In this document: positions 5,999 to 27,337 of the stretch, one piece after another
Position numbering within the stretch: the stretch's first letter is position 1
Layout of the letters: each line of letters begins with the position of its first letter
Source: Macrostomum lignano
Lineage: Eukaryota
Assembly (NCBI GenBank): GCA_002269645.1
Contig: NIVC01004833.1
Span: 1-33,853, forward strand
Direction: 5' to 3'
DNA length: 33,853 nt
Notes under the pieces: generated by a model
Databases searched by the model: none
Told to the model about the DNA's origin: nothing
What the model saw: only the letters and a program-made list of their open reading frames with translations
Position numbers and translations under genes: made by a program

Positions 5999-6212
5999 AG
6001 GAACAGAACTTTTATTGTACTAGTGAGGTCACGCTCCCAAGCTAGGTTTAAGGTCTTCATCTGGGGCATCTGGGTTCTGCTGATTAAGCAGATGAAGCTG
6101 AAATACGAGTAGCTTGCCCCGTGTATCACAAAAAAATTAATAAATTGCCATCATGCTACTTATCTGCATTGGAGCGTAGTAGTAGAGATAATCAATTTGC
6201 TTTTCTCTAGAA

Positions 6213-7400: not shown

Positions 7401-7448
7401 CTTCATTCATCCTTCGGTGTTCAGCCACCCTTATATCCTTTAGTATTC

Positions 7449-7715
7449 CCTTCACCTGACCATTGCCCTCACCTGACCATTGCCCTCATCTGACCATTGC
7501 CCTCACTTGACTATTGCCCTCACCTGACCATTGCCCTCACCTGACCATTGCCCTCACCTGACCATTGCCCTCATCTGACCATTGCCCTCACCTGACCATT
7601 GCCCTCACCTGACCATTGCCCTCATCTGACCATTGCCCTCACCTGACCATTGCCCTCACCTGACCATTGCCCTCACCTGACCATTGCCCTCACCTGACCA
7701 TTGCCCTCACCTGAC
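7449..7715 (+). repeat. 17-bp minisatellite (CCTCACCTGACCATTGC), about 15 copies, ending at a candidate acceptor 44 nt upstream of the PDP start codon
   Basis: Period 17; the last unit runs into CTGACTGATTTCAG| (AG at 7723-7724). Confidence 0.92.
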
Positions 7716-7768
7716 TGATTTCAGCGCCCCCGCACATTCTCCACTATCGCGTCCGCTGCCGCCTCGCC

Positions 7769-10700
7769 ATGACGATTCGGCGAGCGGCCGCTCGTCCCGC
7801 GTGGCTTCGCCGCTGGCTGCACGCGGCTGCTGGGCTGCGCCATGCGGAGGTCATCAGCGGCAACCAGCAGTTCCCCCTCATCAGCCCGCAGCAGGTGCGC
7901 CAGCTGCTGCGCCAGGGAGCCGAGCGGCACACGGCTGACGTGGCCGGCTGGCAGGTCTCCGTGCACTGCAACCAGGTGCCCTGCAACCGGCCCGTGGAGG
8001 ACAGGTGACGGCTGGTCTTGGTTTCACTTGAAATTTCTTTCAATTTGTGCGTCTCCTGACTCAACTGCCACTCGTGGGTCACCTGACTCAACTGCCACTC
8101 GTGGGTCACCTGACTCAACTGCCACTCGTGGGTCACCTGACTCAACTGCCACTCGTGGGTCACCTGACTCAACTGCCACTCGTGGGTCACCTGACTCAAC
8201 TGCCACTCGTGGGTCACCTGACTCAACTGCCACTCGTGGGTCACCTGACTCAAATGCCACTAGCGGGTCACCTGACTCAACTGCCACTCGTGGGTCACCT
8301 GACTCAACTGCCACTCGTGGGTCACCTGACTCAACTGCCACTCGTGGGTCACCTGACTCGAATGGCACTCGTGGGTCACCTGACTCGAATGCCACTCGTG
8401 GGTCACCTGACTCAACTGCCACTAGCGGGTCACCTGACTCAACTGCCACTAGCGGGTCACCTGACTCAAATGCCACTAGCGGGTCACCTGACTCGAATGC
8501 CACTCGTGGGTCACCTGACTCAACTGCCCCAATCTCCAGACTGGCCGTCAGCCGCCTGCTGATTGGGCCTCCCGTGCAGTCGCAGGACGGTCCGCTGCTT
8601 GTCGGCGTCTTCGACGGGCACGCAGGACCCGCGTGCGCGAACTCCGTGCACCTGCGCCTGCCCGACTACCTGGCCGTGGCCATGGCCGACCCGCTGCGCC
8701 TGCACGACATCAAGGTGGCCGGACAGGCCCTCAGTCTCAACATTGCCAGGCTGCCCCACGGCCCGGAACTCGAGGAGGAGCTCGGCCGGCTGCACGACCA
8801 GCAGGTGCTGCGCCTGTTGTCATAGCAACTTACTAGCAACGCTCTGTCGCTGTTCTTCATTTTTAACTACACCAGCCTGCTGGATTCTTCGGTCCCCACC
8901 GCAAATCCTGTGCTGGATTCACCGCTCCGCAAATCCTGTGCTGGATTCTCCGCTCCGCAAATCCTGTGCTGGATTCTCCGCTCCCTACCGCAAATCCTGT
9001 GCTGGATTCTCCGCTCCCTACCGCAAATCCTGTGCTGGATTCTCCGCTCCCTACCGCAAATCCTGTGCTGGATTCTCCGCTCCCTACCGCAAATCCTGTG
9101 CTGGATTCTCCGCTCCCTACCGCAAATCCTGTGCTGGATTCTCCGCTCCCTACCGCAAATCCTGTGCTGGATTCTCCGCTCCCTACCGCAAATCCTGTGC
9201 TGGATTCACCGCTCCGCAAATCCTGTGCTGGATTCTCCGCTCCCTACCGCAAATCCTGTGCTGGATTCTCCGCTCCCTACCGCCCCATCCTGTGCTGGAT
9301 TCTCCACTCCCTACCGCAAATCCTGTGCTGGATTCTCCGCTCCCTACCGCAAATCCTGTGCTGGATTCTCCACTCCCTACCGCCCCATCCTGTGCTGGAT
9401 TCTCCACTCCCTACCGCAAATCCTGTGCTGGATTCTCCGCTCCCTACCGCCCCATCCTGTGCTGGATTCTCCACTCCCTACCGCAAATCCTGTGCTGGAT
9501 TCTCCGCTCCCTACCGGCTCCTCGAATTCCACTCTCCCCTCTGCTTTCGCCCCTCCCCTCTTTAACCAGCCAGCCACCCGTACCGCAGCTGTCCGCCTTC
9601 ACCTCGGAGACGCTGTCCATGAGCGAGCCGGAGCCGCTCGGCCACCGCCTGCGGGAGGCCATGCAGCGCCTCGACACGGACATCGGCGAGGCTGCGCAGC
9701 CCCGGCCAGGCGCCGCTGGCCTCAACCGCGCGCTGCTCCGCGTGGCGCTGTCCGGCTGCGTGGGCACCGTGGCGCTGCTGGAGCCGCCCGACCGCCTCCA
9801 CGTGCTGCACGTTGGCGACTGCGCCGCCGTCCTCGGCCGCTGCCACGACCAGCTGTGGTACGCGCACAAGCTCACCGAAGAGCACCGAGCCGACAATCCC
9901 GCCGAGCTCGAGCGCCTCATGCGCTCCCATCCGGTCAGCGAGCGCGACTTCCTTGTCCGCTACGACCGCCTGCTCGGCGAGCTCATGCCGCTGCGCGCGT
10001 TCGGCGACATTCGCTACAAGTGGAGCGCCGACCTGCTGCGCACCGCCGGCCGCCTGCTGCAGCTGCCCGCCACCTACAACCCCGTGCCGCAGTACTACTA
10101 CACCCCGCCTTACCTCACCGCCGAGCCCGACTTCGCCACGCAGCAGGTGACCTACGCTCATGTGACCCCCTCCTCTAATGTGACCCCCTCCTCTAATGTG
10201 ACCCCCTCCGCTCATGTGACCCCCTCCTCTAATGTGACCCCCTCCTCTAATGTGAATCCCCCTCTAATGTGGTCCCCTCCGCTCATGTGACCCCCTCTAA
10301 TGTGGTCCCCTCCGCTCATGTGACCCCCTCTAATGTGACCCCCTCGGCTCATGTGACCCCTCCTCTAATGTGACCCCCTCCTCTAATGTGACCCCCTCCG
10401 CTCATGTGACCCCCTCCTCTAATGTGACACCCTCCTCTAATGTGAATCCCCCTCTAATGTGGTCCCCTCCGCTCATGTGACCCCCTCTAATGTGACCCCC
10501 TCCTCTAATGTGACCCCCTCCGCTCATGTGACCCCCTCCTCTAATGTGACACCCTCCTCTAATGTGAATCCCCCTCTAATGTGAATCCCCCTCTAATGTG
10601 GTCCCCTCCGCTCATGTGACCCCCTCTAATGTGACCCCCTCCTCTAATGTGACCCCCTCCGCTCATGTGACCCCCTCCTCTAATGTGACACCCTCCTCTA

Positions 10701-11326
10701 ATGTGAATCCCCCTCTAATGTGGTCCCCTCCGCTCATGTGACCCCCTCTAATGTGACCCCCTGCTCTAATGTGAACCCCTCTAATGTGACCCCCTCCGCT
10801 CATGTGACCCCCTCTAATGTGACCCCCTGCTCTAATGTGAATCCCTCCGCTCGTGTGACCCCCTCCTCTAAAACCCCTCCGCTCGTGACCCCTCCTCTAA
10901 TGTGAACCCCTCCGCTCATGTGACCCCCTCCACTATGTCCTCCACTCATGTGACCCATGTGTCTGCTGCTCCCCATCCTGGCAGATTACAGGCGACGACC
11001 GGTTCCTCATCCTGGCCTCCGACGGCCTGTGGGACCACCTGCCGCCCGAGGACGCTGTCGCCATTGTCGGAGCCGCCATCGACAGCGGCGCCTTCGGCAT
11101 CGGCGGAGGCGGCGGCAGCAGCGGCAGCGACGCGGAAGAAGTCACGGAGAGCGGGCGCAGCGGCGCCAACCTTGCCACGCTGCTGGTGCGGGCGGCGCTG
11201 GGCGGGCAGAAGCGGGGAGACTCGGAGCCCTCGGAGGCGATGATCACCCAGCTGCTGTCGGCGCCAGCCAACGTGGCCAGGTACTACAGGGACGACATCA
11301 CCGTGGCAGTGCTGCTGCTGCACTGA
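7769..11326 (+). CDS. PDP1: Mitochondrial pyruvate dehydrogenase phosphatase catalytic subunit-like PP2C; join(7769..8004,8540..8804,9589..10146,10985..11326), 466 aa
   Basis: All three introns are GT-AG with matching phases (2,0,0); exons total 1401 nt ending in TGA. Motifs: NRPVEDR, LVGVFDGHAG, QRLDTDI, LHVGDCAAVLG, EHRADNPAELERL, RLLGELMPLRAFGDIRYKW, YYTPPYLTAEP, DRFLILASDGLWD, YRDDITV. The Arg/Ala-rich, acid-free N-terminus resembles a mitochondrial presequence. PDP1 versus PDP2 orthology cannot be resolved. Confidence 0.92.
8055..8527 (+). repeat. 27-bp minisatellite (CCTGACTCAACTGCCACTCGTGGGTCA), about 17 copies, filling PDP intron 1
   Basis: Period 27; the last unit runs into the acceptor at 8538-8539. 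Confidence 0.95.
8878..9515 (+). repeat. 33-bp minisatellite (CTACCGCAAATCCTGTGCTGGATTCTCCGCTCC) with shorter variants, filling PDP intron 2
   Basis: Period 33 (DSPLPTANPVL shadow ORF); each unit has an AATCC...GGATT inverted pair. Confidence 0.94.
10147..10955 (+). repeat. Variable minisatellite of about 20 bp (ATGTGACCCCCTCCTCTA / ATGTGACCCCCTCCGCTC) filling PDP intron 3
   Basis: Starts at the GTGACC donor (10147) and continues to about 30 nt before the acceptor at 10984. Confidence 0.92.
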
Positions 11327-11423
11327 CGCAAGTTGTTTTCGTGCCATTAACCTGCGTATTGACAGAAACTGTTGTAAAGTGAGCATTCACATCCAAAGCT
11401 TTGTTTTCAATTCAATTGATTGC

Positions 11424-12266
11424 TCCGCTGGTCTCTACTGACAGTAGTTTCGGGTGAAAACAACAGCCTATTTACAGTCTCTGCTGGTCTCTACTGACAG
11501 TAGTTTCGGGTGAAAACAACAGCCTATTTACAGTCTCTGCTGGTCTCTACTGACAGTAGTTTCGGGTGAAAACAACAGCCTATTTACAGTCTCTGCTGGT
11601 CTCTACTGACAGTAGTTTCGGGTGAAAACAACAGCCTATTTACAGTCTCTGCTGGTCTCTACTGACAGTAGTTTCGGGTGAAAACAACAGCCTATTTACA
11701 GTCTCTGCTGGTCTCTACTGACAGTAGTTTCGGGTGAAAACAACAGCCTTTTTACAGTCTCTGCTGGTCTCTACTGACAGTAGTTTCGGGTGAAAACAAC
11801 AGCCTATTTACAGTCTCTGCTGGTCTCTACTGACAGTAGTTTCGGGTGAAAACAACAGCCTATTTACAGTCTCTGCTGGTCTCTACTGACAGTAGTTTCG
11901 GGTGAAAACAACAGCCTATTTACAGTCTCTGCTGGTCTCTACTGACAGTAGTTTCGGGTGAAAACAACAGCCTATTTACAGTCTCTGCTGGTCTCTACTG
12001 ACAGTAGTTTCGGGTGAAAACAACAGCCTTTTTACAGTCTCTGCTGGTCTCTACTGACAGTAGTTTCGGGTGAAAACAACAGCCTTTTTACAGTCTCTGC
12101 TGGTCTCTACTGACAGTAGTTTCGGGTGAGAACAACAGCCTTTTTACAGTCTCTGCTGGTCTCTACTGACAGTAGTTTCGGGTGAGAACAACAGCCTTTT
12201 TACAGTCTCTGCTGGTCTCTACTGACAGTAGTTTCGGGTGAAAACAACAGCCTATTTACAGTCTCT
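11424..12266 (+). repeat. 56-bp minisatellite, about 15 near-identical copies, just 3' of the PDP stop codon
   Basis: GTCTCTACTG recurs at 11431, 11487 and onward. Unit: CTCTGCTGGTCTCTACTGACAGTAGTTTCGGGTGAAAACAACAGCCTATTTACAGT. Confidence 0.96.
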
Positions 12267-13687: not shown

Positions 13688-14130
13688 AGCCGGTGTCGCT
13701 GAAGGCGTTGCGCCTTGGAGCCCGCAGCCCCTCCTGCAGCAACATGTTAATGACGCCGCTCTGCGTCAGTTGATGCTCGCGGCAACGGCTTAGTTAACAA
13801 GGCCTGAGTTCCATACAGACAAACTTTGCCTTCTCTTTTTAGTTGCACTGACACCGTTTGGACGGCAGCTTCTAGTGGGTGTGTGGGTGCAATTTGGTTC
13901 GTGGGTGCAAATTTCCATGTTGAACTCAAATTCAGCAAAATGTTTCGGGTTGTCAGAGATGACAGGATTTGACAACATTTTGACATTGTATTTTAGATTA
14001 ATAGCGGTAGAGAAGACGAAACGGATTAGGGGAATAGTACAAGTGAGATTGTGAGTCAAATCGCAGCCTCTGCAGCTGCATCTCGCAGGTGTTCAAGTTT
14101 ATTTTTAACTCTCCAAAACAAATATTTGAG

Positions 14131-15030
14131 TCAGCGACGTCTCCACGAGTCCTGCGCAGCTCCCGCCCACTGCTGCCGCCCGCCCATGGTGACGTTGAGC
14201 CTGTTGTCGTCCCCGACGATGTTGAGCAGGCCTCCGTTCTGGTTCACCCCGCCGCAGTCCAGCAGGTCGGCTTCGCTGCCGCCGGCCTCCCTCCCCAGTC
14301 TGGACCGCGGGCCGCACGCCTCGACCGTCTGCTCGGTTCGCAGGCTGGCCATCGAGTTCCATCGGCCGTTGGGCTGGTGCTCGGGCCGGCAGAGCCGCAG
14401 CTCCGGCTGGGCCGCCGACTCCGCGGTGTTGACAGTCGCCGGATTCGCCCCGGCGCTGCTTCTGGCCGGCGGAATCGGCATCTGCCGGAACTCCCAGAAC
14501 AGCGACTTCAGCTCCGCCAGGGCGAAACGCCGCGGCTTTGTCTCAACGCAGCTGAGCAGCTCCGCCTCCCTCTCCAGCAGCTCCTGCCGGGACTTCACTT
14601 TCCTCCGCTCCAGAAACTTCACGAGCTGCCGGTCCGTGTTGGCCGCCTTCAGCGAGTTTCTCCAGCGCTTCTTCGCCGGCTTTTCTTCGAGGGCCTCCTC
14701 CCAGCCGCTGCTGTAGGCGCTCTCGCCGCGGTTCCAAAGCTTGGCGTTGTCCAGCACCTTCAGGAGCTCGTTGTGGGAGAAGCGCTGCCTCCGAGACCCG
14801 GCTCGGTCGATGATGCTCTTGCGATGCTCGACCAGCTGCTGCACATCCGTGACCTGCTGCACCTCGATGAAGTAGTCCCGCAGGCACCTGCGCGTTTTTT
14901 GTCTCTTAAAAAAGGTCACGAGATCCTGGCTGACCGGCCGGCTGCCGATTTCCGCATAGCCGCTCTCGCCTGAGACCCGCGGCAGTTGCGGGTTTCTGAG
15001 GCGGACTGGAAAATCGCTCAGTTCGGACAT
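14131..15030 (-). CDS. G1: intronless 299-aa protein of unknown family; two tandem 81-aa repeats of a basic helical domain plus a C-terminal RHIM-like motif
   Basis: ATG to TGA, GC-rich and non-repetitive. TATAAAAA at 15102-15109 (-) and AATAAA at 14098-14103 (-). Shares motifs with G2-G4. Confidence 0.8.
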   Translation of the reverse strand: MSELSDFPVRLRNPQLPRVSGESGYAEIGSRPVSQDLVTFFKRQKTRRCLRDYFIEVQQVTDVQQLVEHRKSIIDRAGSRRQRFSHNELLKVLDNAKLWNRGESAYSSGWEEALEEKPAKKRWRNSLKAANTDRQLVKFLERRKVKSRQELLEREAELLSCVETKPRRFALAELKSLFWEFRQMPIPPARSSAGANPATVNTAESAAQPELRLCRPEHQPNGRWNSMASLRTEQTVEACGPRSRLGREAGGSEADLLDCGGVNQNGGLLNIVGDDNRLNVTMGGRQQWAGAAQDSWRRR

Positions 15031-15315
15031 GATCGCCGAGATGGTTCGCTGCTTGGCTACGTGGCGGTTCTGAGTCTTGGCTGGCTGGCTGCTTCGTCAT
15101 ATTTTTATATCTTGGGTTCATTCCGCATTATAGTGCCTCCCCCTAAAATATCTGTGACTAATAATACCCTCTAAGTGGGCTTTTGTTGTCACAATGTACA
15201 GTGCAGACTCGTGCACAATGCCCGGCATAATTTTGTATATTTAAAATAGAGCTGGCAGACAGATGCGCCTCCATAGTTTTGCCCAGAACCGCCGCTTCAT
15301 CCAAGCAGCTCAGAG
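15031..15315. promoter_or_regulatory. 285-bp divergent intergenic region and probable bidirectional promoter between G1 and G2
   Basis: Head-to-head ATGs. TATA-like elements on both strands (15102-15109 -, about 15236-15248 +). An inverted homologous leader block lies at 15048-15072 (-) and 15284-15309 (+). Confidence 0.6.
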
Positions 15316-16224
15316 ATGAGTGACGTGAGTAGGGCGATTCAGTCCTGGCAGGGCGACGCGCGGGTGAAGAAGTTCATCATCAAGTCCTGCCCGAAGGGCG
15401 ACAGCCTCGGCCAGTTCCTCCGGGATGAGAATCTGCGAAGTCTCAACAAGAAAATTGCCAAACAGAAAAATGCGAAATTCGCTATTAAAGATGTTGACGC
15501 GGCTGTGAACCATCTCAGGGACAGCTGGGCTGCCAAGATGTCGCAAGCCGCACGAGCGGAGCCGGGCTACGATAGCCTCGCCGAATCCGGCGGCCGAGCG
15601 GAGTCGGGCTACGATAGCCTCGCCGAATCCCCCTGCCGCAGCTCAGCCTCTGAAGCCAGCGCCACCCAGACTTGCAGAAGCGTCTCCTCTCTGGCCAACC
15701 GGCCGCTGCCGCCAGTGCCATCAGAGCGGCGGGACTCCGACCGCGGCTACCAGACTCAGTCAGGCAGCCTGTCTGATGAGGACTCGCAGGCTGCCGGAGC
15801 TGCAGCAGCCCTAGCTGCGACCGCGGAGCCGAGCGTCCAGCCTCCGCGGCCGCAGCCGAGACGCTCTGCAGTCAGGGTGAGTCACAATGATGCCGCGAGC
15901 AGCTCCTGCGGTGCCGCCGAGGCTGCCGAGCAGCTGGTGGCGGACTCTGAGCAGGACTCGGCTGGCCGCACCTGGTCGGAGGCCGCGGCAGTCAGAGCTC
16001 CGCAGGCCCGGCCGCGGCTCAGCTTGGCCCGTCGTTCCAGCGAGACTCGTGGCGGCGATGACGCGTCCAGCCTCTCGGGACCCGCCGCCACCGCTGCGGC
16101 CCCGCCATCGAGCGGTCGGACGCCGGTCTGCCAGAACGGCTTCTTCAACATCCACGGCGGCAAAAACGAGATCGATGTCGACCTGGAGGCTGTGAAAATG
16201 TTGATGGACTTCAAATCGAAATGA
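15316..16224 (+). CDS. G2: intronless 302-aa protein of unknown family (helical N-domain, duplicated E[SP]GYDS motif, RPLPPVP, C-terminal RHIM-like motif)
   Basis: ATG to TGATGA with AATAAA at 16283 and 16292. The N-terminus aligns with G3 (WQGD..VKKF); the C-terminal motif aligns with G1. Confidence 0.85.
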   Translation: MSDVSRAIQSWQGDARVKKFIIKSCPKGDSLGQFLRDENLRSLNKKIAKQKNAKFAIKDVDAAVNHLRDSWAAKMSQAARAEPGYDSLAESGGRAESGYDSLAESPCRSSASEASATQTCRSVSSLANRPLPPVPSERRDSDRGYQTQSGSLSDEDSQAAGAAAALAATAEPSVQPPRPQPRRSAVRVSHNDAASSSCGAAEAAEQLVADSEQDSAGRTWSEAAAVRAPQARPRLSLARRSSETRGGDDASSLSGPAATAAAPPSSGRTPVCQNGFFNIHGGKNEIDVDLEAVKMLMDFKSK

Positions 16225-16784
16225 TGACCTTCTGATTCATATTTTGCACTGCTCAATTGGTCATTTTTTCTCTGTAAAATGAAATAAAAACAATAAATCT
16301 TTTCGCGCGATATCTTTTCAAAAATATATTCGAATAACCTCATTGAAATAGTTGATCATCGTTTTTTTATTTCTGAGATCCGAATTGGATTGTAAAGTTT
16401 CTGTTGTCCTTGCATTTCGTTAACCTTGCCGTGCTGGCGCTGGCCTCGATGCAGTAAGAGTTTGCAAAATAGTCAAGGCTATTTTTAGAAACCATTGTTG
16501 GGAATTTCAAACAGAAGAGCTAATAGTGTCTAATAGAGGCACAACCCTTTTGCCCAACCCAACCCAACCCTTCTGACCAACCCCAAATGTTTATTCAGGC
16601 ACCTGACGTCAGGGCCTATTAGGTAGGTGCGAATGTCAAGGTACTTTTGTAATTTTTTTTTATTCCTGACAATGTTTATTCCGTGTTATTGGAACTGCGG
16701 CCTACGGTTCTGTGCTTATTAAATGATATGACAACCCGCAGCCAGCGGCTACCTCGTATTAAATTTTTTTGCTCCTGATACACT

Positions 16785-16791
16785 TATAAAT
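16785..16791 (+). promoter_or_regulatory. TATA-box-like element upstream of G3
   Basis: TATAAAT 41 nt upstream of the G3 ATG. Confidence 0.45.
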
Positions 16792-16825
16792 GCGCTGCAG
16801 ACTTTCCAGTACTTAGCGCTCGGAC

Positions 16826-17560
16826 ATGCCAAGCCAGGTGGTCCAGGAGATTCGCTGCTGGCAGGGCGACCCAGCCGTCAAAAAGTTCGAGTCCGCCTGC
16901 TCGAAGTCGACCAGCCTGCAGGCGTTCTTCAGCGAGCGCAAGGATCAGCGACTATTGAAGAAGTTCCACGATCAGAAGCCGCAGAAGTTCGAGCGCAACC
17001 AGCTGCTAGATGCCCTGCAGCACCTCCGGAACTGCCTGAGTCAGCGGCAACAGCGCGAGAACGCCACCGGAAGCGCCGCCGGAAGCGCCGCCAGAAGCGC
17101 CGCCGGAAGCGCCGCCGGAAGCGCCGCCGGAAGCGCCGCCGGAAGCGCCGCCGGAAGCGCCGCCGGAAGCGCCATCGGAAGCGTCGAAACCGGCTACTGC
17201 AGCGTGAGCACCAGCTCAAGTCTTCCCTTGGACGCAGCTGCCGACCCATCGCTCGGTGGGCCCGCGGCCTCCGTTCTCAGCCCGGTGGATCCGCAGCCGG
17301 CCGAGCCTGTCTACGACGAGCTGTACCCGCGCCGGCGGCTCCCTGCGGCACCAGCAGCTGTTGAAGCGCCGAAGCCGCGGTCTCGCGCCTCCCTGGCGAC
17401 GCCTGGCGCCAATCTGGTGGGCTGCGCCTCGCCAACTCCGCCGGTGCCGGCGCCGCGAGCCTCGAGTGACGCGCGCTGGCGGCAGAGCAGCGGCATCAAT
17501 ATTTCTATAACTTGTCCTGTCCAGCTGCAGACTGAGTGTTATCAAGGACGACTGAACTAA
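16826..17560 (+). CDS. G3: intronless 244-aa paralog of G2 with a (GSAA)n linker
   Basis: ATG to TAA. The N-domain aligns with G2; contains ETGYCS, EPVYDELY and C-terminal RQSSGINISI. Confidence 0.83.
   Translation: MPSQVVQEIRCWQGDPAVKKFESACSKSTSLQAFFSERKDQRLLKKFHDQKPQKFERNQLLDALQHLRNCLSQRQQRENATGSAAGSAARSAAGSAAGSAAGSAAGSAAGSAAGSAIGSVETGYCSVSTSSSLPLDAAADPSLGGPAASVLSPVDPQPAEPVYDELYPRRRLPAAPAAVEAPKPRSRASLATPGANLVGCASPTPPVPAPRASSDARWRQSSGINISITCPVQLQTECYQGRLN
17069..17182 (+). repeat. 12-bp coding tandem repeat (GGAAGCGCCGCC; GSAA about x9) within G3
   Basis: In-frame repeat between the N-domain and the ETGYCS motif. Confidence 0.9.
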
Positions 17561-17613
17561 GGAGGAAGAGACACTTAGAGGAAAATAGTAGTATTTGCAG
17601 CAGGACAGTCCCA

Positions 17614-17777
17614 CAACCAGTACGCTGGGGCAGTTCTGCCCATTCCGCTGACCCCTGAGCACATAGAAGTCCTGACTTTCTAATCATCAAGCATGTGCGC
17701 TCGTCTGTGCCTTTGGGGGGGGGGTTGGCCCTCATGGTTGTGAATTGCGCGAAAACCATACACAAAGCCCCAAGTGA
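17614..17777 (+). repeat. Dispersed repeat, copy 2, starting about 50 nt after the G3 stop codon
   Basis: Homologous to 13452-13687 in inverted orientation (see copy 1). Confidence 0.8.
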
Positions 17778-18236
17778 ACGTGGCCAGGGTGATGCGAGGG
17801 TCAGACGCCAAAATGATTTACAAGGAGTGAATATTTCGCAGCCCGAATTCCAGTGGAATTTATTTATTCTTAATCTTCTACTTAAGCTGCTCTTAGCTAT
17901 CATATCCCTGATTTTTAAGCCAAATTATTAGAGTCAAATTCATCTTATTGACAGCCTGTCACCTCACGGTTCGTGTAAATCAATTGTTCAAGTATAGCAG
18001 ATGTTGAATTGCCATGCAGTTTCATGCGATCTTGCCTGTCCCGTTTGCAGATCTTTTCAGTAGTTTTTGCAGTTCATTTTTTTCAATTTAAGCGTAGTTT
18101 TAATAAGGCACTTAGTAAGCCGCCCTTACTAGTCAGTGTCTAATTATAGACCTATTGTACATTTAGTAATTTGCACGAGCGTACAGCCTAAAAATGCCGA
18201 GCGCTCTCCCTTACAGCCGCACCGACAGCCATCGCG

Positions 18237-19064
18237 ATGAGCTCAAATGCGCTCTTTCTGATCGACATCGTCCGCGACTCGGGCGGCAGCCGGGAGGCCG
18301 GGAATTTCGTCATCAAGAACTTGCCGAAGAACCTCACGGCGAAAGACTTCCTGGACAAGAACTACAGCAGGCGGCTGTCTCGTCAGTTCGAGGGCATCAA
18401 GAAACAGCCGTGCTCGCAGCGGGAGTTCCAGCAGCTCCTCGGCAAAATGAGGCGGCTCAGCCAGGCCTCAGTGAGCGGCGGCGAGCGAGACTCCGCCTAC
18501 GACAGCTCGACAATTTCATCCCGCGCCTCCAGTGCCAACCAGCTGGTGGCGGCAAAGGCGGCGGAGGCGGCGGAGGCGAAGGCGGCGGAGGCGGCCAAGG
18601 CGGAGGCGGCCAAGGCGGAGGCAGCCAAGGCGGAGGCAGCCAAGGCGGAGGCGGCCAAGGCGGAGGCAGCCAAGGCGGAGGCGGCCAAGGCGGAGGCGGC
18701 CAAGGCGGAGGCGGCCAAGGCGGAGGCGGCCAAGGCGGAGGCGGCCAAAGGCAACTGGGAAGCCACGCGGGTGGTGCAGCCGGCGCAGCGGCTCGGAGCT
18801 CCGCCGCCGATTCTGACGCCGGGCTCGGAGAGGCCCGGAGGCGAGCCGCAGCGGTTGGCTCAGCCGCGGCTGCCCACGGTGCCACCGCAGGTGGCAGATC
18901 GGCAGCAGCCGCCGCCTCCGCCGCCGCCGCCATCCGCACCGGCACCTCAGCCGCAGCCGCAGCCGCAGCCGCAGCCGCAAGCGATCTTCAGGCCAGGCAG
19001 AGTCAGGCAGAGCGGTGCCATCAACGTCGTGGGCCACAGGACCAGCATCGCGGTGCGCGACTAA
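18237..19064 (+). CDS. G4: intronless 275-aa member of the same family with an (AEAAK)11 helical linker and a poly-Pro/PQ tract
   Basis: ATG to TAA with AATAAA at 19170. FVIKNLPK..TAKDFL aligns with G2 FIIKSCPK..SLGQFL; contains DSAYDS and C-terminal VRQSGAINVVGHRTSIAV. Confidence 0.8.
   Translation: MSSNALFLIDIVRDSGGSREAGNFVIKNLPKNLTAKDFLDKNYSRRLSRQFEGIKKQPCSQREFQQLLGKMRRLSQASVSGGERDSAYDSSTISSRASSANQLVAAKAAEAAEAKAAEAAKAEAAKAEAAKAEAAKAEAAKAEAAKAEAAKAEAAKAEAAKAEAAKAEAAKGNWEATRVVQPAQRLGAPPPILTPGSERPGGEPQRLAQPRLPTVPPQVADRQQPPPPPPPPSAPAPQPQPQPQPQPQAIFRPGRVRQSGAINVVGHRTSIAVRD
18585..18749 (+). repeat. 15-bp coding tandem repeat (GCGGAGGCRGCCAAG; AEAAK x11) within G4
   Basis: Eleven in-frame units counted directly. 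Confidence 0.92.
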
Positions 19065-19509
19065 GCGGAGATTTAAGGCCGGTGAACTGCGCTGTACATT
19101 AACTTTTCTGAATGCCAAACTGACATTAGCCTACTGACTGACCCTGTGTACATTATCCAGCATGCGAATAATAAATTTATGATCCGTTCGCTCACAGTAT
19201 GTAAACTTCTTTTCTGTTGCAAACAATAGCTCTTGGTCCCGCCTTGCCGTTACTTGAGGAGAGCATCAAAGCAGATGGGGCTGCTACAGTGCAGTGGCAG
19301 CGCTAACGAGCTGCTCCGCTCAAGCTCAAAAACGGGAATCACCAAAGCCTCAGATTTTTAAAAAAGTATCGCTTCGCACAAAGCACACCTGTCCTCCGCG
19401 TGCCTTTGTTCGCGCCAAGCTCCTGGAAACGTTGCGTTCAGACCCTGCCTGCCTCCTTGCCTGCTGCTCTCTTCACTGATAAACACGGCACCGATCTCGT
19501 TAGCTCAGA

Positions 19510-19727
19510 CTGCCTTATGCTCTGCCTTCTGCTCTGCCCTCTGCTCTGCCTTCTGCTCTGCCTTCTGCTCTGCCTTCTGCTCTGCCCTCTGCTCTGCCTT
19601 CTGCTCTGCCCTCTGCTCTGCCTTCTGCTCTGCCTTCTGCTCTGCCTTCTGCTCTGCCTTCTGCTCTGCCTTCTGCTCTGCCTTCTGCTCTGCCTTCTGC
19701 TCTGCCCTCTGCTCTGCCTTCTGCTCT
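19510..19727 (+). repeat. 12-bp minisatellite (CTGCCTTCTGCT), about 18 copies
   Basis: Direct periodicity; gives the LCLL shadow ORF. Confidence 0.93.
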
Positions 19728-20468
19728 CTCCTCCTCCCTTACCTTCTTGAGACTTCTTGACCCCCCCCACAGCCTCAGATCTCAGGTCTCAGCAGCCCCA
19801 GCTCCCCCATCTCAGCAGCTGCCCCATCCCGCAAAATGTGAAAGGCCTCGGCAGACCAAAGCAAGCAGTGGTGGGAAAATTCTCCCAACATGGGAGGCTG
19901 ACCGGACGCTGCCGAGAAGCTGTCTCCACTGTTTTATCGCGAGTTCGAGCGGCGGCAGGCCGATCAGAATAAATTACTTATCCAAGCACCGAAGCTCCGC
20001 AGCTGCCGACTGTTTATTCAGAATTTATCAGCCCCGACCGGCCGCTGCCGCTCCGCCGATCAAAGCGGAGCTCGGTTCGATTTTGCACTTTTAGCTGCGA
20101 AACAAAAAGATTGGAGAAGGTGGATGAACTGAGCAATACAGAGAAGAGGTTTGAGCAGCAATGAGCCGCGCTGCACGAACCGAGTTATGAAAAACTGGCA
20201 CTTCTCACCGCCCTTCTCTCCCAGCGGCCTCTGCGCCGCTTTCTTCGCCTTAACAGAGTTGGGGAGGAGCGCGGGCCGAGGAGCGTCCCCATTCAGTCCG
20301 GGAAATATTAGATTTTGCAACCCCCCCCCCCAACTGCAGCTCCCGCCAGGGCTGGGTGCTGGGCGCTCGTGTCATTTGCTTGATAATGGGGGGGGTCCAC
20401 CTGCACTGCAGTGCGGCTCCCTGCGTGCGGGACTGGCTGGGTGCGAGCAGGGAGTGGGAGCGGCCAAG

Positions 20469-20845
20469 TTACAGTGTGTTAGCGAGCCTGTTACAGTGTG
20501 TTAGCGAGCCGATACAGTGTGTTAGCGAGCCTGATACAGTGTGTTAGCGAGCCTGTTACAGTGTGTTAGCGAGCCTGATACAGTGTGTTAGCGAGCCTGA
20601 TACAGTGTGTTAGCGAGCCTGATACAGTGTGTTAGCGAGCCTGATACAGTGTGTTAGCGAGCCGATACAGTGTGTTAGCGAGCCTGTTACAGTGTGTTAG
20701 TGAGCCTGTTACAGCAGGTGTTCGGGAGGCTGTTACAGCAAGTGTTCGGGAGGCTGTTACAGCAGGTGTTCGGGAGGCTGTTACAGCAGGTGTTCGGGAG
20801 GCTGTTACAGCAGGTGTTCGGGAGGCTGTTACAGCAGGTGTTCAG
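20469..20845 (+). repeat. Compound minisatellite: a 22-bp unit (TACAGTGTGTTAGCGAGCCTGW) switching near 20708 to a related 24-bp unit (TTACAGCAGGTGTTCGGGAGGCTG)
   Basis: Periods read directly; both units share CTG.TACAG..GTGTT. Confidence 0.9.
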
Positions 20846-21449
20846 AAAGCCTCAGGTGCTGGATGGACACATGAATTCATGACCAGCTGTCTTCGGGCTG
20901 TGCTCTCGCATATATTTTGCACATTGTCCGTCTGTCTCTGCTCGGGCATTCGCGATTTCCCAGCATCACGTGATGGAGCCCTCAAATTCAGGACGCCCGG
21001 CTGCATCAGATGAGGCTGGGCCAGGTGGAGAAAGGGTGGGGAGGGCTGAGCAGTTTGAGCTGCACGCTCATTTCACACCTTCTGAATTTTCCCACGGATT
21101 AACCCACAGTTCGACACCTTGCCAGGGGATCTGGGGATGAGGCGGCAGGTAACGAGGGCAGCGGGACGATCCAGCATCTCCGAATCCCAGACTCGATAAT
21201 TCCATCATGCTTTATTGATGCCGAAGACTGCAGGACCTCCTCCCCAATGATGGGACGCGGAGGCTGGCATTCTTCTCGCTCTCTCAAAGGCTGCCAACAG
21301 TCAGTGCCAAGTAATCCCTGCTATTCGCATCCCCGGCAGAGCTGTCCTTGCTCCCGTGCTCACGTTCTGCCACCCTCGAACTGGCATTTTTTATAACCGG
21401 GCCTTAACCCAAACCCCGTGTGTCTCAATCACTGACCTCTACCCCTGGT

Positions 21450-22657
21450 GCAGCTGCTGAGATGGGGGAGATGCTGAGATGGGGAGCTGCTGAGATGGGG
21501 CAGCTGCTGAGATGGGGGAGATGCTGAGATGGGGAGCTGCTGAGATGGGGCAGCTGCTGAGATGGGGGAGATGCTGAGATGGGGAGCTGCTGAGATGGGG
21601 CAGCTGCTGAGATGGGGGAGATGCTGAGATGGGGAGCTGCTGAGATGGGGCAGCTGCTGAGATGGGGAGATGCTGAGATGGGGAGCTGCTGAGATGGGGC
21701 AGCTGCTGAGATGGTGAGCTGCTGAGTCGGGGGAGCTGCTGAGATGGGGAGATGCTGAGATGGGGAGATGCTGAGATAGGGAGCTGCTGAGATAGGGCAG
21801 CTGCTGAGATGGGGGAGATGCTGAGATGGTGAGCTGCTGAGATGGGGCAGCTGATGAGATGGGGGAGATGCTGAGATGGTGAGCTGCTGAGATGGGGAGA
21901 TGCTGAGATGGGGAGCTGCTGAGATGGGGGAGATGCTGAGATGGGGAGCTGCTGAGATGGGGCAGCTGCTGAGATGGGGAGATGCTGAGATGGGGGAGAT
22001 GCTGAGATGGGGGAGATGCTAAGATGTGGAGATGCTAAGATGGGGAGATGCTGAGATGGTGAGCTGCTGAGATGGGGCAGCTGCTGAGATGGGGGAGATG
22101 CTGAGATGGGGAGATGCTAAGATGGGGGAGATGCTGAGATGGGGAGATGCTAATATGGGGAGATGCTAAGATGGGGAGATGCTAAGATGGGGGAGATGCT
22201 GAGATGGGGAGATGCTAAGATGGGGAGATGCTAAGATGGGGAGATGCTGAGATGGGGGAGATGCTGAGATGGGGAGATGCTAAGATGGGGAGATGCTAAG
22301 ATGGGGAGATGCTGAGATGGTGAGCTGCTGAGATGGGGCAGCTGCTGAGATGGGGGAGATGCTGAGATGGGGAGATGCTAAGATGGGGGAGATGCTGAGA
22401 TGGGGGAGCTGCTGAGATGGGGGAGCTGCTGAGATGGGGGAGATGCTGAGATGGGGGAGCTGCTGAGATAAAGGAGATGCTGAGATGGGCAGCTGCTGAG
22501 ATGAGGAGATGCTGAGATGGGGGAGCTGCTGAGATGGGGAGATGCTGAGATGCTCAGATGGGGGGCTCTGAGATGAGGGAGCTGCTGAGACGGGGGAGCT
22601 GCTGAGATGGGGGAGCTGCTGAGATGGGTCAGCTGCTGAGATGGGAGAGCTGCTGAG
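21450..22657 (+). repeat. G-rich variable minisatellite of about 14-17 bp (core GCTGAGATGGGG)
   Basis: About 1.2 kb of permuted GCTGAGATGGGG(G)AGAT and GCTGAGATGGGGCAGCT units. Confidence 0.93.
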
Positions 22658-23500
22658 GATCAGTTTCTGTACACTGCTGCTTGTCTGCATCAGATGGAGG
22701 GGCAGGGGAGAGATGAAGAGTCCCGCCTGTTGCCAGGCGGGCGCGCAGGTAGGCGGGTCCAGTTTCCGACCAATTTTCTCGCCTCTCCGGGCGGGGCCTT
22801 GAGAGAGGCGGAGCCGCATTGGGGACCTGGCGGCAGTGCGATGTCGGGCTTGATTAGCTCCGGGCATCCGACGTGTCTGCGCCGAGATGGGGCGGAGAGG
22901 CTGCAGGGCCGCTGGCTGCTGCATGGCACAGAGGCTTCAATTAAGCAGTTGTCAGATGCGGGCCGTCCGGCAGCCTCCCCAACTCCCGCTCTCTGGGCTT
23001 CATCGCTTTCACTGCCACTCAGAGGCCCCAGAATTGCAGGCGCAACACGCGGCGGGCATCTCAGGGCCACTCAGCCACCGCAGCCTGCCTGGCATCAAGC
23101 AAGTCTTGTTCCGCTTTCATCAGAGCCCGGCTGCTGCGGCTGTCAGTCAGGATTGTAAATTATCGGACAGGTTCACCAGAGAGCAATTAGACTGATTGTA
23201 ATTAATGTCGGGCCCCGTGGGCATCAGCGAGTCGGACAATTATGATGCAGGGCGGAGGCTGGACAATGGCCGGTGATGGATCACCGGGGCTCAGAGAGCT
23301 CGGCGCACTGCATTGAGCAGACTGCGCAGGCCCAGCCCAGAGCCGGGATGCACTTCATATTAGTGACTTCTCACCCAAGCCTCGGCCCCGTTAGTCAAGG
23401 CCGCGACAGGCCCTCAGGCAGTGCATTGATATGCCGGATAATTCCACATAGTGATGAGTACGTGTCATTGTTGTTTGAGACAGGGTCTATTATTGAGACA

Positions 23501-24213
23501 GTGATGAGCAGTGATGAGCAGTGATGAGCAGTGATGAGCAGTGATGAGCAGTGATGAGCAGTGATGAGCAGTGATGAGCAGTGATGAGCAGTGATGAGCA
23601 GTGATGAGCAGTGATGAGCAGTGAGGAGTAGTGATGAGCAGTGATGAGCAGTGATGAGCAGTGAGGAGTAGTGATGAGCAGTGATGAGCAGTGATGAGCA
23701 GTGAGGAGTAGTGATGAGTAGTGATGAGCAGTGATGAGCAGTGATAAGCAGTGATGAGCAGTTATGAACAGTGATGAGCAGTGATGAGCAGTGATGAGCA
23801 GTGATGAGCAGTTATAAGCAGTTATGAGCAGTGATGAGCAGTGATGAGCAGTGATGAGCAGTGATGAGCAGTGATGAGCAGTGATGAGCAGTGATGAGCA
23901 GTGATGAGCAGTGATGAGCAGTGATGAGCAGTGAGGAGTAGTGATGAGCAGTGATGAGCAGTGATGAGCAGTGAGGAGTAGTGATGAGCAGTGATGAGCA
24001 GTGATGAGCAGTGAGGAGTAGTGATGAGCAGTGATGAGCAGTGATGAGCAGTGATGAGCAGTGATGAGCAGTGATGAGCAGTGATGAGCAGTGATGAGCA
24101 GTTATAAGCAGTTATGAGCAGTGATGAGCAGTGATGAGCAGTGATGAGCAGTGATGAGCAGTGATGAGCAGTGATGAGCAGTGATGAGCAGTGATGAGCA
24201 GTGATGAGCAGTG
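23501..24213 (+). repeat. 10-bp minisatellite (GTGATGAGCA), about 71 copies
   Basis: Exact 10-bp register with occasional GTGAGGAGTA and GTTATAAGCA variants. Confidence 0.97.
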
Positions 24214-25027
24214 AAAGCAGAGTATGAAATTCGGCCTGGGGCTGGAAGCCGTCCTGCGGCTCCTCGCAGCTGGAAGTCTTCAGCCGTGCGACCCATTTTC
24301 TGTTTCTAAGAAACAAGGGATTACAGTGAGCCGGTCCCTGCGGCGGCAAGAGAAGCCATGGCGCTGGCGGGCGCCGCCCTGCAGATCCCCCGCCCAGCTC
24401 AACAGAGGCGGCACTAATGAAGCGGTAATTTGGGATCGCGAGCGGCAGAGCAGCAAGCACCGAAGTCTGCACTGGAAAGCGGCAAGAGGCTACTAAAGCA
24501 CAGATCATTTACGATCCGAAACTCCTATTCAGCAATGGAATAAGGCTATTCCTGGCATCAAAAAAGAGCAGATCGTGGCCTGCACACGAGTAGGAGAAGG
24601 CGAGGCTCAGGCTGGACTCTCAATTATTGCGGTCTGTCCACCACGGCCAGCCTCCTCCAAGATTTCCCCACTTGCCCCCCCCAGTCTTCTCCGGCGTCTC
24701 CGCCCCCTCCCCCTCCCCCCCGAGAGCAGCCGCTGCTGCACTTTCAGCGCAGTTGCGACTTCTGGGCGATTTGCCAGACACCCCCGGTGCGGGGCGGCAG
24801 TGAGCACCGGCTTAGCGAGTCTCCGACCCCCCTCCTCCACCGATCCCCAGGGCCTGTCAGCTGCCAGTCAGTTGCAAAGCCCCGGAGTGCCTCCCCGCTG
24901 AGCTCTCCATGCCAGCAGACTGCCCGAGTGTAAACGGCCCGCTTGGCTCAGTAATCCTGAGCTTGGAACTGCAACCTCTGCAACTGCGGCGGATCAGCGC
25001 TGTCCTCAAATCTGGTCTGCGCGGTCT

Positions 25028-25184
<157 letters not shown>

Positions 25185-26779: not shown

Positions 26780-27020
26780 GCTGAGGGAGCAGGGAGAGAT
26801 GAGCTGGGGACTGAGGGAGGGAGCGGGGATAGATGAGCTGGGGACTGAGGGAGGGAGCGGGGAGAGATGAGCTGGGGACTGAGGGAGGGAGCGGGGAGAG
26901 ATGAGCTGGGGACTGAGGGAGGGAGCGGGGATAGATAAGCTGGGGACTGAGGGAGGGAGCGGGGAGAGATGAGCTGGGGACTGAGGGAGGGAGCGGGGAG
27001 AGATGAACTGGGGACTGAGG
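26780..27020 (+). repeat. 34-bp G-rich minisatellite (GATGAGCTGGGGACTGAGGGAGGGAGCGGGGAKA), about 7 copies
   Basis: GAGCTGGGGA recurs at 26801, 26835 and 26869. Confidence 0.92.
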
Positions 27021-27337
27021 AACTGAGGTGAAGTCGGTTTGATTTGAGTACCGGTGCGCGGCTTCACTTAAGCGGGCTCGTGTTTATTAATATGGCGCTG
27101 GGCACGCAGGCAGGCCGGCCGGGAGACAACACGGGCGGCTGGACAGCAAGCGGACGCGGTACGAAAGCATTGATAAGCTGCGGCTAATGAGGAGCGATGG
27201 AGACAAGCGGGGGGACAAGGACAGACAGACAAAACTAGGGGGGGGGGTCCAAAGCGGGCTGTCCACATCAAAAATTTGTTTTCGCATTGCGCCTTGTCAT
27301 TCAATGTCGTCACTCTCTCGGCGGCGCCGCGCCGAGG

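What the first reader, a model, noticed from the sequence alone, without database searches (positions are those of the whole stretch)
14191..19055. Conserved C-terminal RHIM/beta-arch-like motif in the cluster proteins
Seen: G1 VNQNGGLLNIVGDDNRLNV (14191-14247, -), G2 VCQNG-FFNIHGGKNEIDV (16126-16179), G4 VRQSG-AINVVGHRTSIAV (19002-19055) and a degenerate G3 WRQSS-GINISITCPVQLQ (17477-17530). Consensus: V-x-Q-[NS]-G-x(1-2)-hydrophobic-N-[IV]-x-G-x-x-[NT]-x-[IL]-x-V. It is conserved while the flanking linkers cannot be aligned. Known: RHIMs read hydrophobic-Q-hydrophobic-G-x-x-N-x-[LM] (RIPK3 VQVGDNNYL), and curli repeats use a similar GxxN beta-arc between alternating hydrophobic/polar strands. 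Inference: this is a strand-arc-strand amyloid nucleation motif. The core is one residue out of register with a canonical RHIM (N-I-x-G instead of I-Q-I-G), so it could be a new motif class rather than a true RHIM.
Basis: partly seen in the sequence, partly recalled or inferred. Interest (0 to 1): 0.8.

Follow-up and report, generated by a model that had tools for sequence, protein, structure and literature searches.

The report
Conserved C-terminal beta motif, flatworm orphan proteins
Four neighbouring, species-restricted genes of the flatworm Macrostomum lignano share a real, conserved 18-residue G/N/Q-plus-hydrophobic motif at their C-termini that looks like an amyloid-type assembly motif, but it is not a RHIM by any sequence test and its amyloid nature cannot be tested with these tools.

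Summary
The 18-residue block is the best-scoring shared segment in the tails of G1, G2 and G4 (score 107 against 71±7 in shuffles, 0/100). It occurs nowhere else in the window in any frame.

The window is a whole 33.9-kb contig of Macrostomum lignano. G1-G4 are a tandem orphan family. A profile search of 1.84 billion representative proteins found relatives only in M. lignano. Pfam, PDB and fold searches gave nothing.

Each protein has a ~80-residue helical N-terminus, a conserved [DE][ST][GA]YxS island, a long low-complexity linker and the C-terminal motif.

The motif has the composition reported for amyloid signalling motifs: Q/N/G/V/I make up 62% of it against 21% elsewhere, K/P/L are depleted, and there is no proline. 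It is the most beta-prone segment of each tail. AlphaFold draws it as a strand-turn-strand at low confidence.

It fails every sequence test for RHIM membership. There is no Pfam hit, a PDB profile search found no RHIM while a RHIM control found RIPK1, RIPK3 and M45, and hhalign gave 0.12% probability.

No partner carrying the motif was found, but the proteome could not be scanned. The amyloid reading is plausible (about 0.35) and untested.

The parts
14131..15030 (-). G1, 299-aa ORF. Most divergent family member, transcribed divergently from G2 (285-bp spacer).
   Evidence: ORF list. The exact product is an NCBI-annotated protein on a 33,853-bp contig. Marginal N-terminal similarity to G3 (E 0.018-0.045), plus the shared architecture.
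15316..16224 (+). G2, 302-aa ORF.
   Evidence: Hits only M. lignano hypothetical proteins P0001 (83% identity) and P0002 (92%).
16826..17560 (+). G3, 244-aa ORF with a (GSAA)n repeat and a half-degenerate motif.
   Evidence: N-terminus is 36-41% identical to G2 (E 5e-11).
18237..19064 (+). G4, 275-aa ORF with an (AAKAE)n repeat and a poly-P/PQ tract.
   Evidence: N-terminus similar to G2 (E 1e-3). The 15-nt coding minisatellite is at 18584-18748.
14191..14247 (-). G1 motif VNQNGGLLNIVGDDNRLNV.
   Evidence: Identical peptide in L001 and L002.
16126..16179 (+). G2 motif VCQNGFFNIHGGKNEIDV.
   Evidence: AF2 places strands at residues 277-280 and 285-288 around the GGKN turn, at low pLDDT. The L001 copy differs by D287N.
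17477..17530 (+). G3 half-motif WRQSSGINISITCPVQLQ. The first half is kept; the second half is lost and contains a proline.
   Evidence: The L001 copy reads RQSGVINISIKCPVQLQ, with 3 non-synonymous differences in 18 codons.
19002..19055 (+). G4 motif VRQSGAINVVGHRTSIAV, two residues before the stop codon.
   Evidence: The L001 copy differs by V264I.
15601..15618 (+). G2 ESGYDS. Representative of the second conserved island [DE][ST][GA]YxS, also at G1 14707-14724(-), G3 17186-17203(+) and G4 18489-18506(+).
   Evidence: The six-frame regex hits only these four sites in the window.
15316..15555 (+). G2 N-terminal helical region (residues 1-80). Equivalent regions: G3 16826-17050, G4 18237-18470, G1 14731-15030(-).
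   Evidence: Alignments A2 and A3. AF2 gives helices 3-10, 15-23 and 31-80, mean pLDDT 65.

Best explanation
G1-G4 are a tandem, lineage-restricted family of soluble, basic, largely disordered cytosolic proteins of Macrostomum lignano. Each carries a small helical N-terminal region, a phosphorylatable [DE][ST][GA]YxS island and a long low-complexity tether. Each ends in an 18-19-residue beta element, V-x-Q-[NS]-G-x(2-3)-N-[IV]-x-G-x-x-[NT]-x-[IL]-x-V.

I think this element most likely works as a homotypic or heterotypic beta-sheet assembly module of the amyloid-signalling kind. Under this reading, three short strands (V-x-Q; hydrophobic-N-[IV]; x-[IL]-x-V) are joined by two Gly-containing turns. 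They stack in register between molecules, with the alternating aliphatic residues buried and the invariant Gln and Asn forming ladders. That would let the four paralogues, and any unknown partner carrying the motif, co-assemble. It is not a member of the RHIM family.

Shown: the motif is real, it is conserved at protein level, it is compositionally and positionally like amyloid signalling motifs, and it is unrelated by sequence to known motif families.

Inferred: beta-arch stacking, co-assembly of the paralogues and any signalling role.
For: - The motif is the best conserved tail segment. It is more conserved between G1, G2 and G4 than their N-terminal regions are.
- Conservation is at protein level, with synonymous codon differences.
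- The conserved positions are two Gly, Gln, Asn and alternating V/I/L. The variable positions alternate with them.
- Composition: Q/N/G/V/I 62% against 21% in the rest of the proteins (p = 5e-11), K/P/L 7% against 20%, and no proline in G1, G2 or G4. Dyrka et al. report the same bias for amyloid signalling motifs: about 25 residues, beta-prone, conserved G/N/Q, enriched Q/N/G/V/I, depleted K/P/L.
- It sits at the extreme C-terminus behind a disordered linker and downstream of a small helical domain. That layout matches fungal and bacterial effector-plus-motif proteins.
- It is the top beta-propensity segment of each tail. AF2 gives a strand-turn-strand.
- It is shared by four adjacent genes.
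- At aligned variable positions G1 carries D-D and R where G2 carries G-K and E and G4 carries H-R. This charge complementarity would favour mixed stacks, as argued for RIP1/RIP3 and HET-s.
- The GenBank gene models at this locus and its paralogue come from an RNA-seq-guided annotation, so the genes are transcribed.
Against: - There is no detectable sequence relationship to RHIM, HET-s or any Pfam family.
- No gene with an NLR, TIR, death-fold or kinase domain carries the motif in the 34-kb window or in L001.
- The N-terminal domain has no recognisable effector fold.
- The AF2 confidence is low, and a strand-turn-strand is equally a plain beta-hairpin.
- Charged residues lie within the motif.
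- G3 has lost the second half. The G1 copy in L001 has a net +1 frameshift upstream of the motif.
- Between the two genomic copies the motif codons do not have significantly fewer non-synonymous changes than the rest: 2 observed against roughly 3.6 expected (my estimate from the counts).
- The family is known from one species only, so deep conservation cannot be assessed.
Confidence: 0.35

Rival explanations
1. The motif is an amphipathic beta-hairpin or beta-strand recognition element. It folds on binding to a globular partner by beta-augmentation and does not polymerise.
For: AF2 draws a hairpin: FNIH, GGKN turn, EIDV. In a hairpin register the conserved aliphatic residues pair across the strands on one face, and the conserved N and Q lie on the other face (sequence). 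Most conserved short elements in disordered tails are partner-binding motifs (general knowledge). No amyloid-family homology was found.
Against: Eighteen residues with about ten constrained positions is long for a linear motif. The N/G/Q/V/I bias and K/P/L depletion are those of amyloid signalling motifs. No candidate partner is known.
Confidence: 0.3
2. The motif is a slowly decaying remnant of the ancestral gene. It looks conserved mainly because the surrounding linkers are scrambled by repeat expansion, and it has little or no function of its own.
For: Linker differences between the genomic copies are mostly in-frame repeat indels. The genes evolve fast, with non-synonymous to synonymous counts of 16/7 for G1 and 35/14 for G2. 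G3's motif is half lost. The G1 copy in L001 is frameshifted. The motif shows no significant deficit of non-synonymous changes between copies.
Against: Between the old paralogues the motif is more conserved (39-50%) than the N-terminal domain (21-28%). Synonymous codons have diverged. The conserved positions follow a structured pattern of G, N, Q and alternating aliphatics rather than being random. The block stands at z = 5 above shuffles.
Confidence: 0.17
3. The motif folds back onto the protein's own N-terminal helical region. This would be an intramolecular lock, or a small split domain, rather than an intermolecular contact.
For: The N-terminal region and the C-terminal motif are the two main non-repetitive conserved parts, together with the short [DE][ST][GA]YxS island. 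The tether between them is long and flexible.
Against: The full-length G2 model has pTM 0.20 and pLDDT below 50 across residues 84-285, so it gives no confident long-range arrangement. G1's N-terminus is very different, yet its motif is the best conserved.
Confidence: 0.1
4. The motif is a true, divergent homologue of the metazoan RHIM or insect cRHIM, and the proteins are adaptors or inhibitors (Pirk-like) of an IMD/RIPK-type pathway.
For: The spacing Q-x-G-x-x-N, and hydrophobic-N-hydrophobic-x-G-x-x-N-x-hydrophobic, recall V-Q-V-G-D-N-N-Y-L. cRHIMs are so loose that only the fourth-position Gly is invariant. [quoted passage not shown]
Against: The defining hydrophobic-Q-hydrophobic-G tetrad is absent, because the residues flanking Q are polar. 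There is no Pfam RHIM hit. The profile search and hhalign are negative while the RHIM control works.
Confidence: 0.05

Closest known systems
RHIM (RIPK1, RIPK3, TRIF, ZBP1, viral M45/ICP6; Pfam PF12721)
   Same: About 18-20 residues, flanked by disordered sequence, and rich in G, N, Q and beta-branched aliphatics. Shares the Q-x-G-x-x-N spacing and a G-x-x-N-x-hydrophobic stretch.
   Different: The core tetrad [IV]-Q-[IVL]-G is absent. Q is flanked by polar residues, and the hydrophobic-N-hydrophobic triad is one residue further from the Gly. No profile similarity was found. The host proteins have no kinase, death, TIR or Z-alpha domain.
Insect and crustacean cryptic RHIMs (PGRP-LC/LE, IMD, Pirk, shrimp SRB2)
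   Same: An invertebrate, loosely defined Gly-centred motif in small or cytoplasmic regions. Pirk also carries it at the C-terminus.
   Different: The cRHIM is defined functionally, by amyloid formation and IMD signalling. Its sequence rule (x-x-x-G) is too loose to test. No PGRP or IMD context is present here.
Fungal PP motif and bacterial BASS3 (RHIM-like amyloid signalling motifs)
   Same: A terminal motif of about 20 residues with conserved N, Q and G, located on a small effector protein.
   Different: The PP motif is a pseudo-palindrome around G-hydrophobic-Q-hydrophobic-G, which is absent here. PP and BASS motifs are paired with an NLR encoded next door, and no such pair was seen here.
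HET-s prion-forming domain / HRAM
   Same: One solenoid rung is 21 residues, with short strands, Gly turns, Asn ladders and charge-complementary stacking of two different repeats.
   Different: HET-s has two repeats per protein, whereas these proteins have one motif each. No Pfam HET-s hit.
Bell-domain proteins with a C-terminal BASS motif (bacteria)
   Same: The architecture: an N-terminal helical domain of about 100 residues plus a C-terminal amyloid-type motif.
   Different: No sequence or fold similarity could be established. The linker here is about 170-190 residues of low-complexity sequence.

Membership tests
RHIM (Pfam PF12721) | Core tetrad [IV]-Q-[IVL]-G inside G-hydrophobic-Q-hydrophobic-G-x-x-N-x-[LMI] | tested here: not met
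   The regex [IVL]Q[IVLC]G..N.[MLIVF] finds nothing in six frames of the window or of L001. In the motif, Q is flanked by N/C/R and N/S.
RHIM (Pfam PF12721) | Match to the family profile | tested here: not met
   hmmscan of the full proteins (E<=1) and of the isolated C-termini (E<=10) returns no RHIM hit.
RHIM (Pfam PF12721) | Reciprocal profile similarity to solved RHIM cores | tested here: not met
   Motif profile A4 against the PDB finds no RIPK, M45 or HET-s chain at E<=10. The control RHIM profile A7 finds RIPK1, RIPK3, M45 (E 0.0025) and mouse RIPK3. hhalign of A4 against A7 gives 0.12% probability over 4 columns.
RHIM (Pfam PF12721) | Forms cross-beta fibrils and hetero-oligomerises with other RHIMs | not testable with these tools
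The rest needs wet-lab work.
cRHIM (IMD pathway) | Four-residue core with an invariant fourth-position Gly (VxxG, LHFG, VHIG, ARNG) | tested here: inconclusive
   NIVG, NIHG and NVVG satisfy x-x-x-G. The published rule is so loose that compliance carries no information.
cRHIM (IMD pathway) | Resides in a PGRP, IMD, Pirk, STING or SRB2-type pathway protein | tested here: not met
   No Pfam domain is present in G1-G4. Profile relatives occur only in M. lignano.
Fungal PP / bacterial BASS3 motif | Pseudo-palindrome centred on Q with a G-hydrophobic-Q-hydrophobic-G core | tested here: not met
   The motif reads V-x-Q-[NS]-G, with polar neighbours of Q.
Amyloid signalling motifs in general (NLR-associated) | The same motif on a receptor (NLR N-terminus) and on an effector encoded by an adjacent gene | tested here: not met
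   Only the four paralogues carry the motif in the window, L001 and L002. Neighbouring genes are peroxiredoxin, PP2C, a GPCR and a kinase fragment, all without the motif. The rest of the proteome could not be scanned.
Amyloid signalling motifs in general (NLR-associated) | About 20-25 residues, terminal, beta-prone, conserved G/N/Q, enriched Q/N/G/V/I and depleted K/P/L | tested here: met
   set against the description. This comparison was made after seeing the motif.
HET-s / HRAM | Two 21-residue pseudo-repeats per protein and a match to Pfam HET-s_218-289 | tested here: not met
   There is one motif per protein and no Pfam hit.

The most novel reading that the evidence does not exclude
G1-G4 define a new amyloid-type signalling or assembly motif in animals, unrelated to RHIM. 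It would sit on a flatworm-specific family of adaptor-like proteins that co-polymerise heterotypically: G1 with G2 or G4, through charge-complementary in-register stacking as between the two HET-s repeats. The conserved [DE][ST][GA]YxS island might switch or degrade them through phosphorylation.
Probability: 0.12. Interest if true: 0.8.

Novelty: new variant of a known kind. Interest (0 to 1): 0.4.

Why it matters
In animals, the papers read here describe amyloid-based signalling only for RHIM and the loosely related cRHIMs. A second, unrelated motif class in a lineage-specific family would show that animals, like fungi and bacteria, invent such motifs repeatedly. M. lignano has an established transgenesis method, so puncta formation and mutants could be tested directly. 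If the motif turns out to be an ordinary partner-binding hairpin, the finding reduces to the annotation of a fast-evolving orphan family.

Tried and rejected
- **Pfam** on the full proteins and on the isolated C-termini: only sub-threshold matches to low-complexity or coiled-coil regions (VasL, SipB, Shadoo, Mitofilin).
- **N-terminal profile against 1.84 billion representative proteins:** only M. lignano fragments, plus one unrelated repeat protein at E 7e-5.
- **N-terminal profile against PDB sequences:** nothing meaningful. The 'lysozyme' hit is three sub-threshold stretches matching the ...AYDSL... island.
- **AlphaFold2:** full-length G2 gave mean pLDDT 44. The N-terminal region gave pLDDT 65 and pTM 0.34. 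Foldseek of that model against the PDB had a best E of 4.4, so no fold assignment was possible.
- **Search for other proteins carrying the motif** (alignment A6 against 5.8 billion proteins, E<=10): no hits. It also failed to return the known family member P0001, so it is uninformative rather than negative (first attempts were rejected).
- **TRAF6-type P-x-E-x-x-[aromatic or acidic] and ITAM-like YDSL-x10-YDSL readings of the linkers:** seen by eye in only some paralogues, and the G2 duplication is absent from the L001 copy. Dropped.
- **The 'VVNLGSDV' stretch** in the C-terminal extension of the neighbouring kinase (tblastn E 0.07 against the G1 tail): judged chance, and it is followed directly by Pro-Pro.
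- **Literature:** no paper mentions these locus tags. A search combining RHIM with flatworm and planarian terms turned up nothing relevant among the top-ranked papers.

Full report
**What the window is.** The best hits of G2 are two hypothetical proteins of Macrostomum lignano. The window is 99.4% identical over 14.3 kb to contig NIVC01003958.1 of assembly GCA_002269645.1 (L002). The exact G1 product is recorded on a contig of 33,853 bp, which is the window's own length. A second copy of the locus lies on the 1.55-Mb contig NIVC01000020.1 (L001). It is 92-98% identical and has the same four genes next to the same PP2C gene. The DV1 genome is known to be partly duplicated. Its GenBank annotation derives from an RNA-seq-guided transcriptome, so the annotated models at these loci are transcript-supported. 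Other genes in the window are a 2-Cys peroxiredoxin, a PP2C phosphatase, a rhodopsin/Srw-type GPCR and a kinase fragment. Minisatellites are everywhere.

**The observation.** The four peptides translate exactly as quoted. Each sits at the end of an uninterrupted ORF of 244-302 codons. In every gene the N-terminal homology region, a second short conserved island and the C-terminal motif lie in one frame. All indels between the two genomic copies are multiples of three, except one in G1. Alternative-frame and antisense ORFs of similar length exist, because the DNA is GC-rich and repetitive. Only the stated frames carry the paralogous similarity.

A three-way block search over the tails of G1, G2 and G4 puts the 18-residue motif first, allowing a spacer of 0-1 residue. 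It scores 107 against 71.4 ± 7.1 in composition-preserving shuffles (z = 5.0, 0/100). The 11-residue core alone is not significant, so it is the whole pattern that counts. Regular expressions for the motif hit only these four genes in six frames of the window, L001 and L002. Codons for the conserved Gly, Val and Ile/Leu differ between paralogues, so the constraint acts on the protein. By hand count from the aligned peptides, motif identity is 9/18 for G1-G2 and 7/18 for G2-G4 and G1-G4. The N-terminal regions of G4 and G1 are 21-28% identical to G2. G3 keeps only R-Q-S-x-x-I-N-I and has a proline in the second half. Its L001 copy reads RQSGVINISIK.

The linkers are not entirely unalignable. 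All four proteins also share [DE][ST][GA]YxS after the helical region: ESGYDS, DSAYDS, ESAYSS and ETGYCS. The regex hits only these four sites in the six-frame translation. There are weaker P-rich and W-x-E-A islands. Much of the linker divergence is in-frame expansion of coding minisatellites: (AAKAE)n in G4, (GSAA)n in G3 and the YDSL unit in G2.

**What the proteins are.** They are an orphan family. A profile of the four N-terminal regions, searched against 1.84 billion representative proteins, recovered only M. lignano sequences (the G1, G2 and G3 copies) plus one unrelated repeat protein. Pfam, PDB sequence search and Foldseek with the N-terminal model gave nothing. The proteins have no hydrophobic N-terminus or membrane span. 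They are hydrophilic and basic, with pI 8.6-10. AlphaFold2 predicts helices for residues ~3-80 of G2 (mean pLDDT 65) and disorder for 84-270. Non-synonymous differences between the two genomic copies are frequent: 16N/7S in G1, 35N/14S in G2, 9N/10S in G3 and 7N/9S in G4. So the family evolves fast.

**Anatomy of the motif.** In G2 numbering it reads V271-C-Q-N-G-F-F-N-I-H-G-G-K-N-E-I-D-V288. The constrained positions are V1, Q3, [NS]4, G5, N8, [IV]9, G11, [NT]14, [IL]16 and V18. Positions 2, 6, 7, 10, 12, 13, 15 and 17 vary. From G5 onward it is an internal pseudo-repeat of six residues: G-x-x-N-hydrophobic-x, then G-x-x-[NT]-x-hydrophobic.

Q/N/G/V/I make up 62% of the three intact motifs against 21% of the rest of the proteins (p = 5e-11). 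K/P/L make up 7% against 20%, and there is no proline. Pro- or Gly-rich residues lie immediately upstream (GRTP, RPGR, DCGG). The motif is the top beta-over-alpha propensity window of every tail. AlphaFold2 draws strands 277-280 and 285-288 around the GGKN turn, with block-mean pLDDT of only 42-60 over residues 271-300.

These properties match the general description of amyloid signalling motifs: about 25 residues, terminal, beta-prone, conserved G/N/Q and hydrophobic patterns, enriched in Q/N/G/V/I and depleted in K/P/L. They also obey Kajava's rules for beta-arcades, namely Gly at turns, N/Q ladders and apolar rows. I made this comparison after seeing the motif, so it is suggestive only.

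**One further hint.** At aligned variable positions G1 has D-D and R where G2 has G-K and E and G4 has H-R. In an in-register stack this would disfavour G1 homopolymers and favour mixed G1:G2 or G1:G4 layers. The same argument has been made for RIP1/RIP3 and HET-s. G1 and G2 are also transcribed divergently from a 285-bp spacer. With three sequences this could be chance.

**Is it a RHIM?** No test supports that.
- Pfam finds no RHIM, HET-s or other amyloid-motif family, even at E ≤ 10 on the isolated C-termini.
- The motif profile finds no RIPK, M45 or HET-s chain among PDB sequences.
- A three-sequence RHIM profile, whose RIPK3 and mouse RIPK1 cores were checked against PDB chains, readily finds RIPK1, RIPK3, M45 and mouse RIPK3.
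- hhalign between the two profiles aligns only G-x-x-N, at 0.12% probability.

Structurally the difference is real. The insect and crustacean 'cryptic RHIM' requires only a Gly at the fourth position. NIVG, NIHG and NVVG comply, but that carries no information.

**What speaks against the signalling model.**
- No other gene in the window, or in the 21 kb of L001, carries the motif.
- The neighbouring kinase's 'VVNLGSDV' stretch is a chance-level match.
- The N-terminal region resembles no effector.
- G3's motif is decaying, with 3 of its 9 non-synonymous differences falling in the 18 motif codons.
- The L001 copy of G1 has an 8-bp deletion plus a 9-bp tandem duplication about 25 codons upstream. 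As assembled, this puts the motif out of frame, and the annotated product P0003 follows the shifted frame. The assembly does contain indel errors, with 80 gaps between the window and L002, so this may or may not be real.

**Verdict.** The motif is a genuine, protein-level conserved element with the look of an amyloid-type assembly motif. It sits on a previously uncharacterised, species-restricted family. It is not a RHIM. I cannot decide here whether it stacks as a cross-beta arcade (my estimate 0.35), docks as a hairpin on a partner (0.30), is a decaying remnant (0.17), locks onto its own N-terminus (0.10) or is a very divergent RHIM (0.05).

Noticed in passing
window 14707-14724(-), 15601-15618(+) (plus a variant EPGYDS at 15559-15576), 17186-17203(+), 18489-18506(+): A second conserved island, [DE][ST][GA]YxS, follows the helical region in all four proteins: ESAYSS, ESGYDS, ETGYCS and DSAYDS. 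The regex hits only these four sites in six frames. It resembles a beta-TrCP-type DSGxxS phosphodegron, or an acidic Tyr/Ser phosphorylation site. G1 has an extra ESGYAE near its N-terminus.
   Followed up: partly
window ~14339-14346 (G1); the matching region of the G1 copy in L001 (ORF 8858-9847, - strand): The L001 copy of G1 lacks 8 bp (AGCCTGCG) and has a 9-bp tandem duplication (AGACGGTCG). The net +1 frameshift lies about 25 codons upstream of the motif. The motif DNA downstream is identical, and the annotated protein P0003 follows the shifted frame. This is either a young pseudogene or variant, or an assembly error.
   Followed up: partly
aligned motif positions 12-13 and 15 (G1 14191-14247, G2 16126-16179, G4 19002-19055): Charges are complementary between paralogues at variable positions. 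G1 has D-D and R where G2 has G-K and E and G4 has H-R. G1 and G2 are also head-to-head, 285 bp apart. This would suit heterotypic in-register stacking, but it rests on three sequences.
   Followed up: no
window 15559-15618 (G2) against L001 ~10280-10297: G2 in the window has a duplicated unit (EPGYDSLAES ... ESGYDSLAES, which reads YDSL-x10-YDSL and looks ITAM-like). The L001 copy has a single altered unit (ESGYYSATDS), through in-frame deletions of 18 and 27 nt.
   Followed up: partly
window 14089-14973(+), 14051-14716(+), 18194-19102(+), 18516-19118(-): Long ORFs of 200-300 codons lie antisense to, or frame-shifted over, G1 and G4. They encode low-complexity Gly-, Arg- and Pro-rich strings and are by-products of GC-rich repetitive coding DNA. 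Older gene models (P0002, and P0003 in part) drift into such frames after indels.
   Followed up: partly
window 32218-32865(-) and 33630-33827(-): Exons of a protein kinase lie here: an HRDIKPKN catalytic loop and DFG motif in the upstream exon, and a kinase C-lobe end plus a ~150-residue tail in the last exon. The tail contains 'VVNLGSDVPP', a chance-level resemblance to the G1 motif (tblastn E 0.07). Pfam does not hit the last exon alone.
   Followed up: partly
window 268-12266 and 19510-33403: TRF lists 24 rows at score >= 300, and overlapping rows with different periods describe the same array, so there are somewhat fewer arrays. Periods run from 10 to 122 bp. Several arrays lie in the PP2C gene region (about 7.8-10.9 kb) and generate long spurious repeat ORFs in several frames.
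   Followed up: no
tails of G1, G2 and G4 (for example G2 residues ~174-184 and ~219-230): There are weaker shared islands in the linkers. One is a P-rich block: QMPIPPARSSA / QPPRPQPRRSA / QPPPPPPPPSA. The other is a W-x-E-A block: WEEALEEKPAK / WSEAAAVRAPQ / WEATRVVQPAQ. They may be homologous remnants or coincidences of low complexity.
   Followed up: no
tool behaviour: The word-indexed search with the C-terminal alignment A6 returned no hit at E<=10. It missed even P0001, which contains one of the query rows verbatim. A null result from this tool on short alignments should not be read as absence.
   Followed up: no
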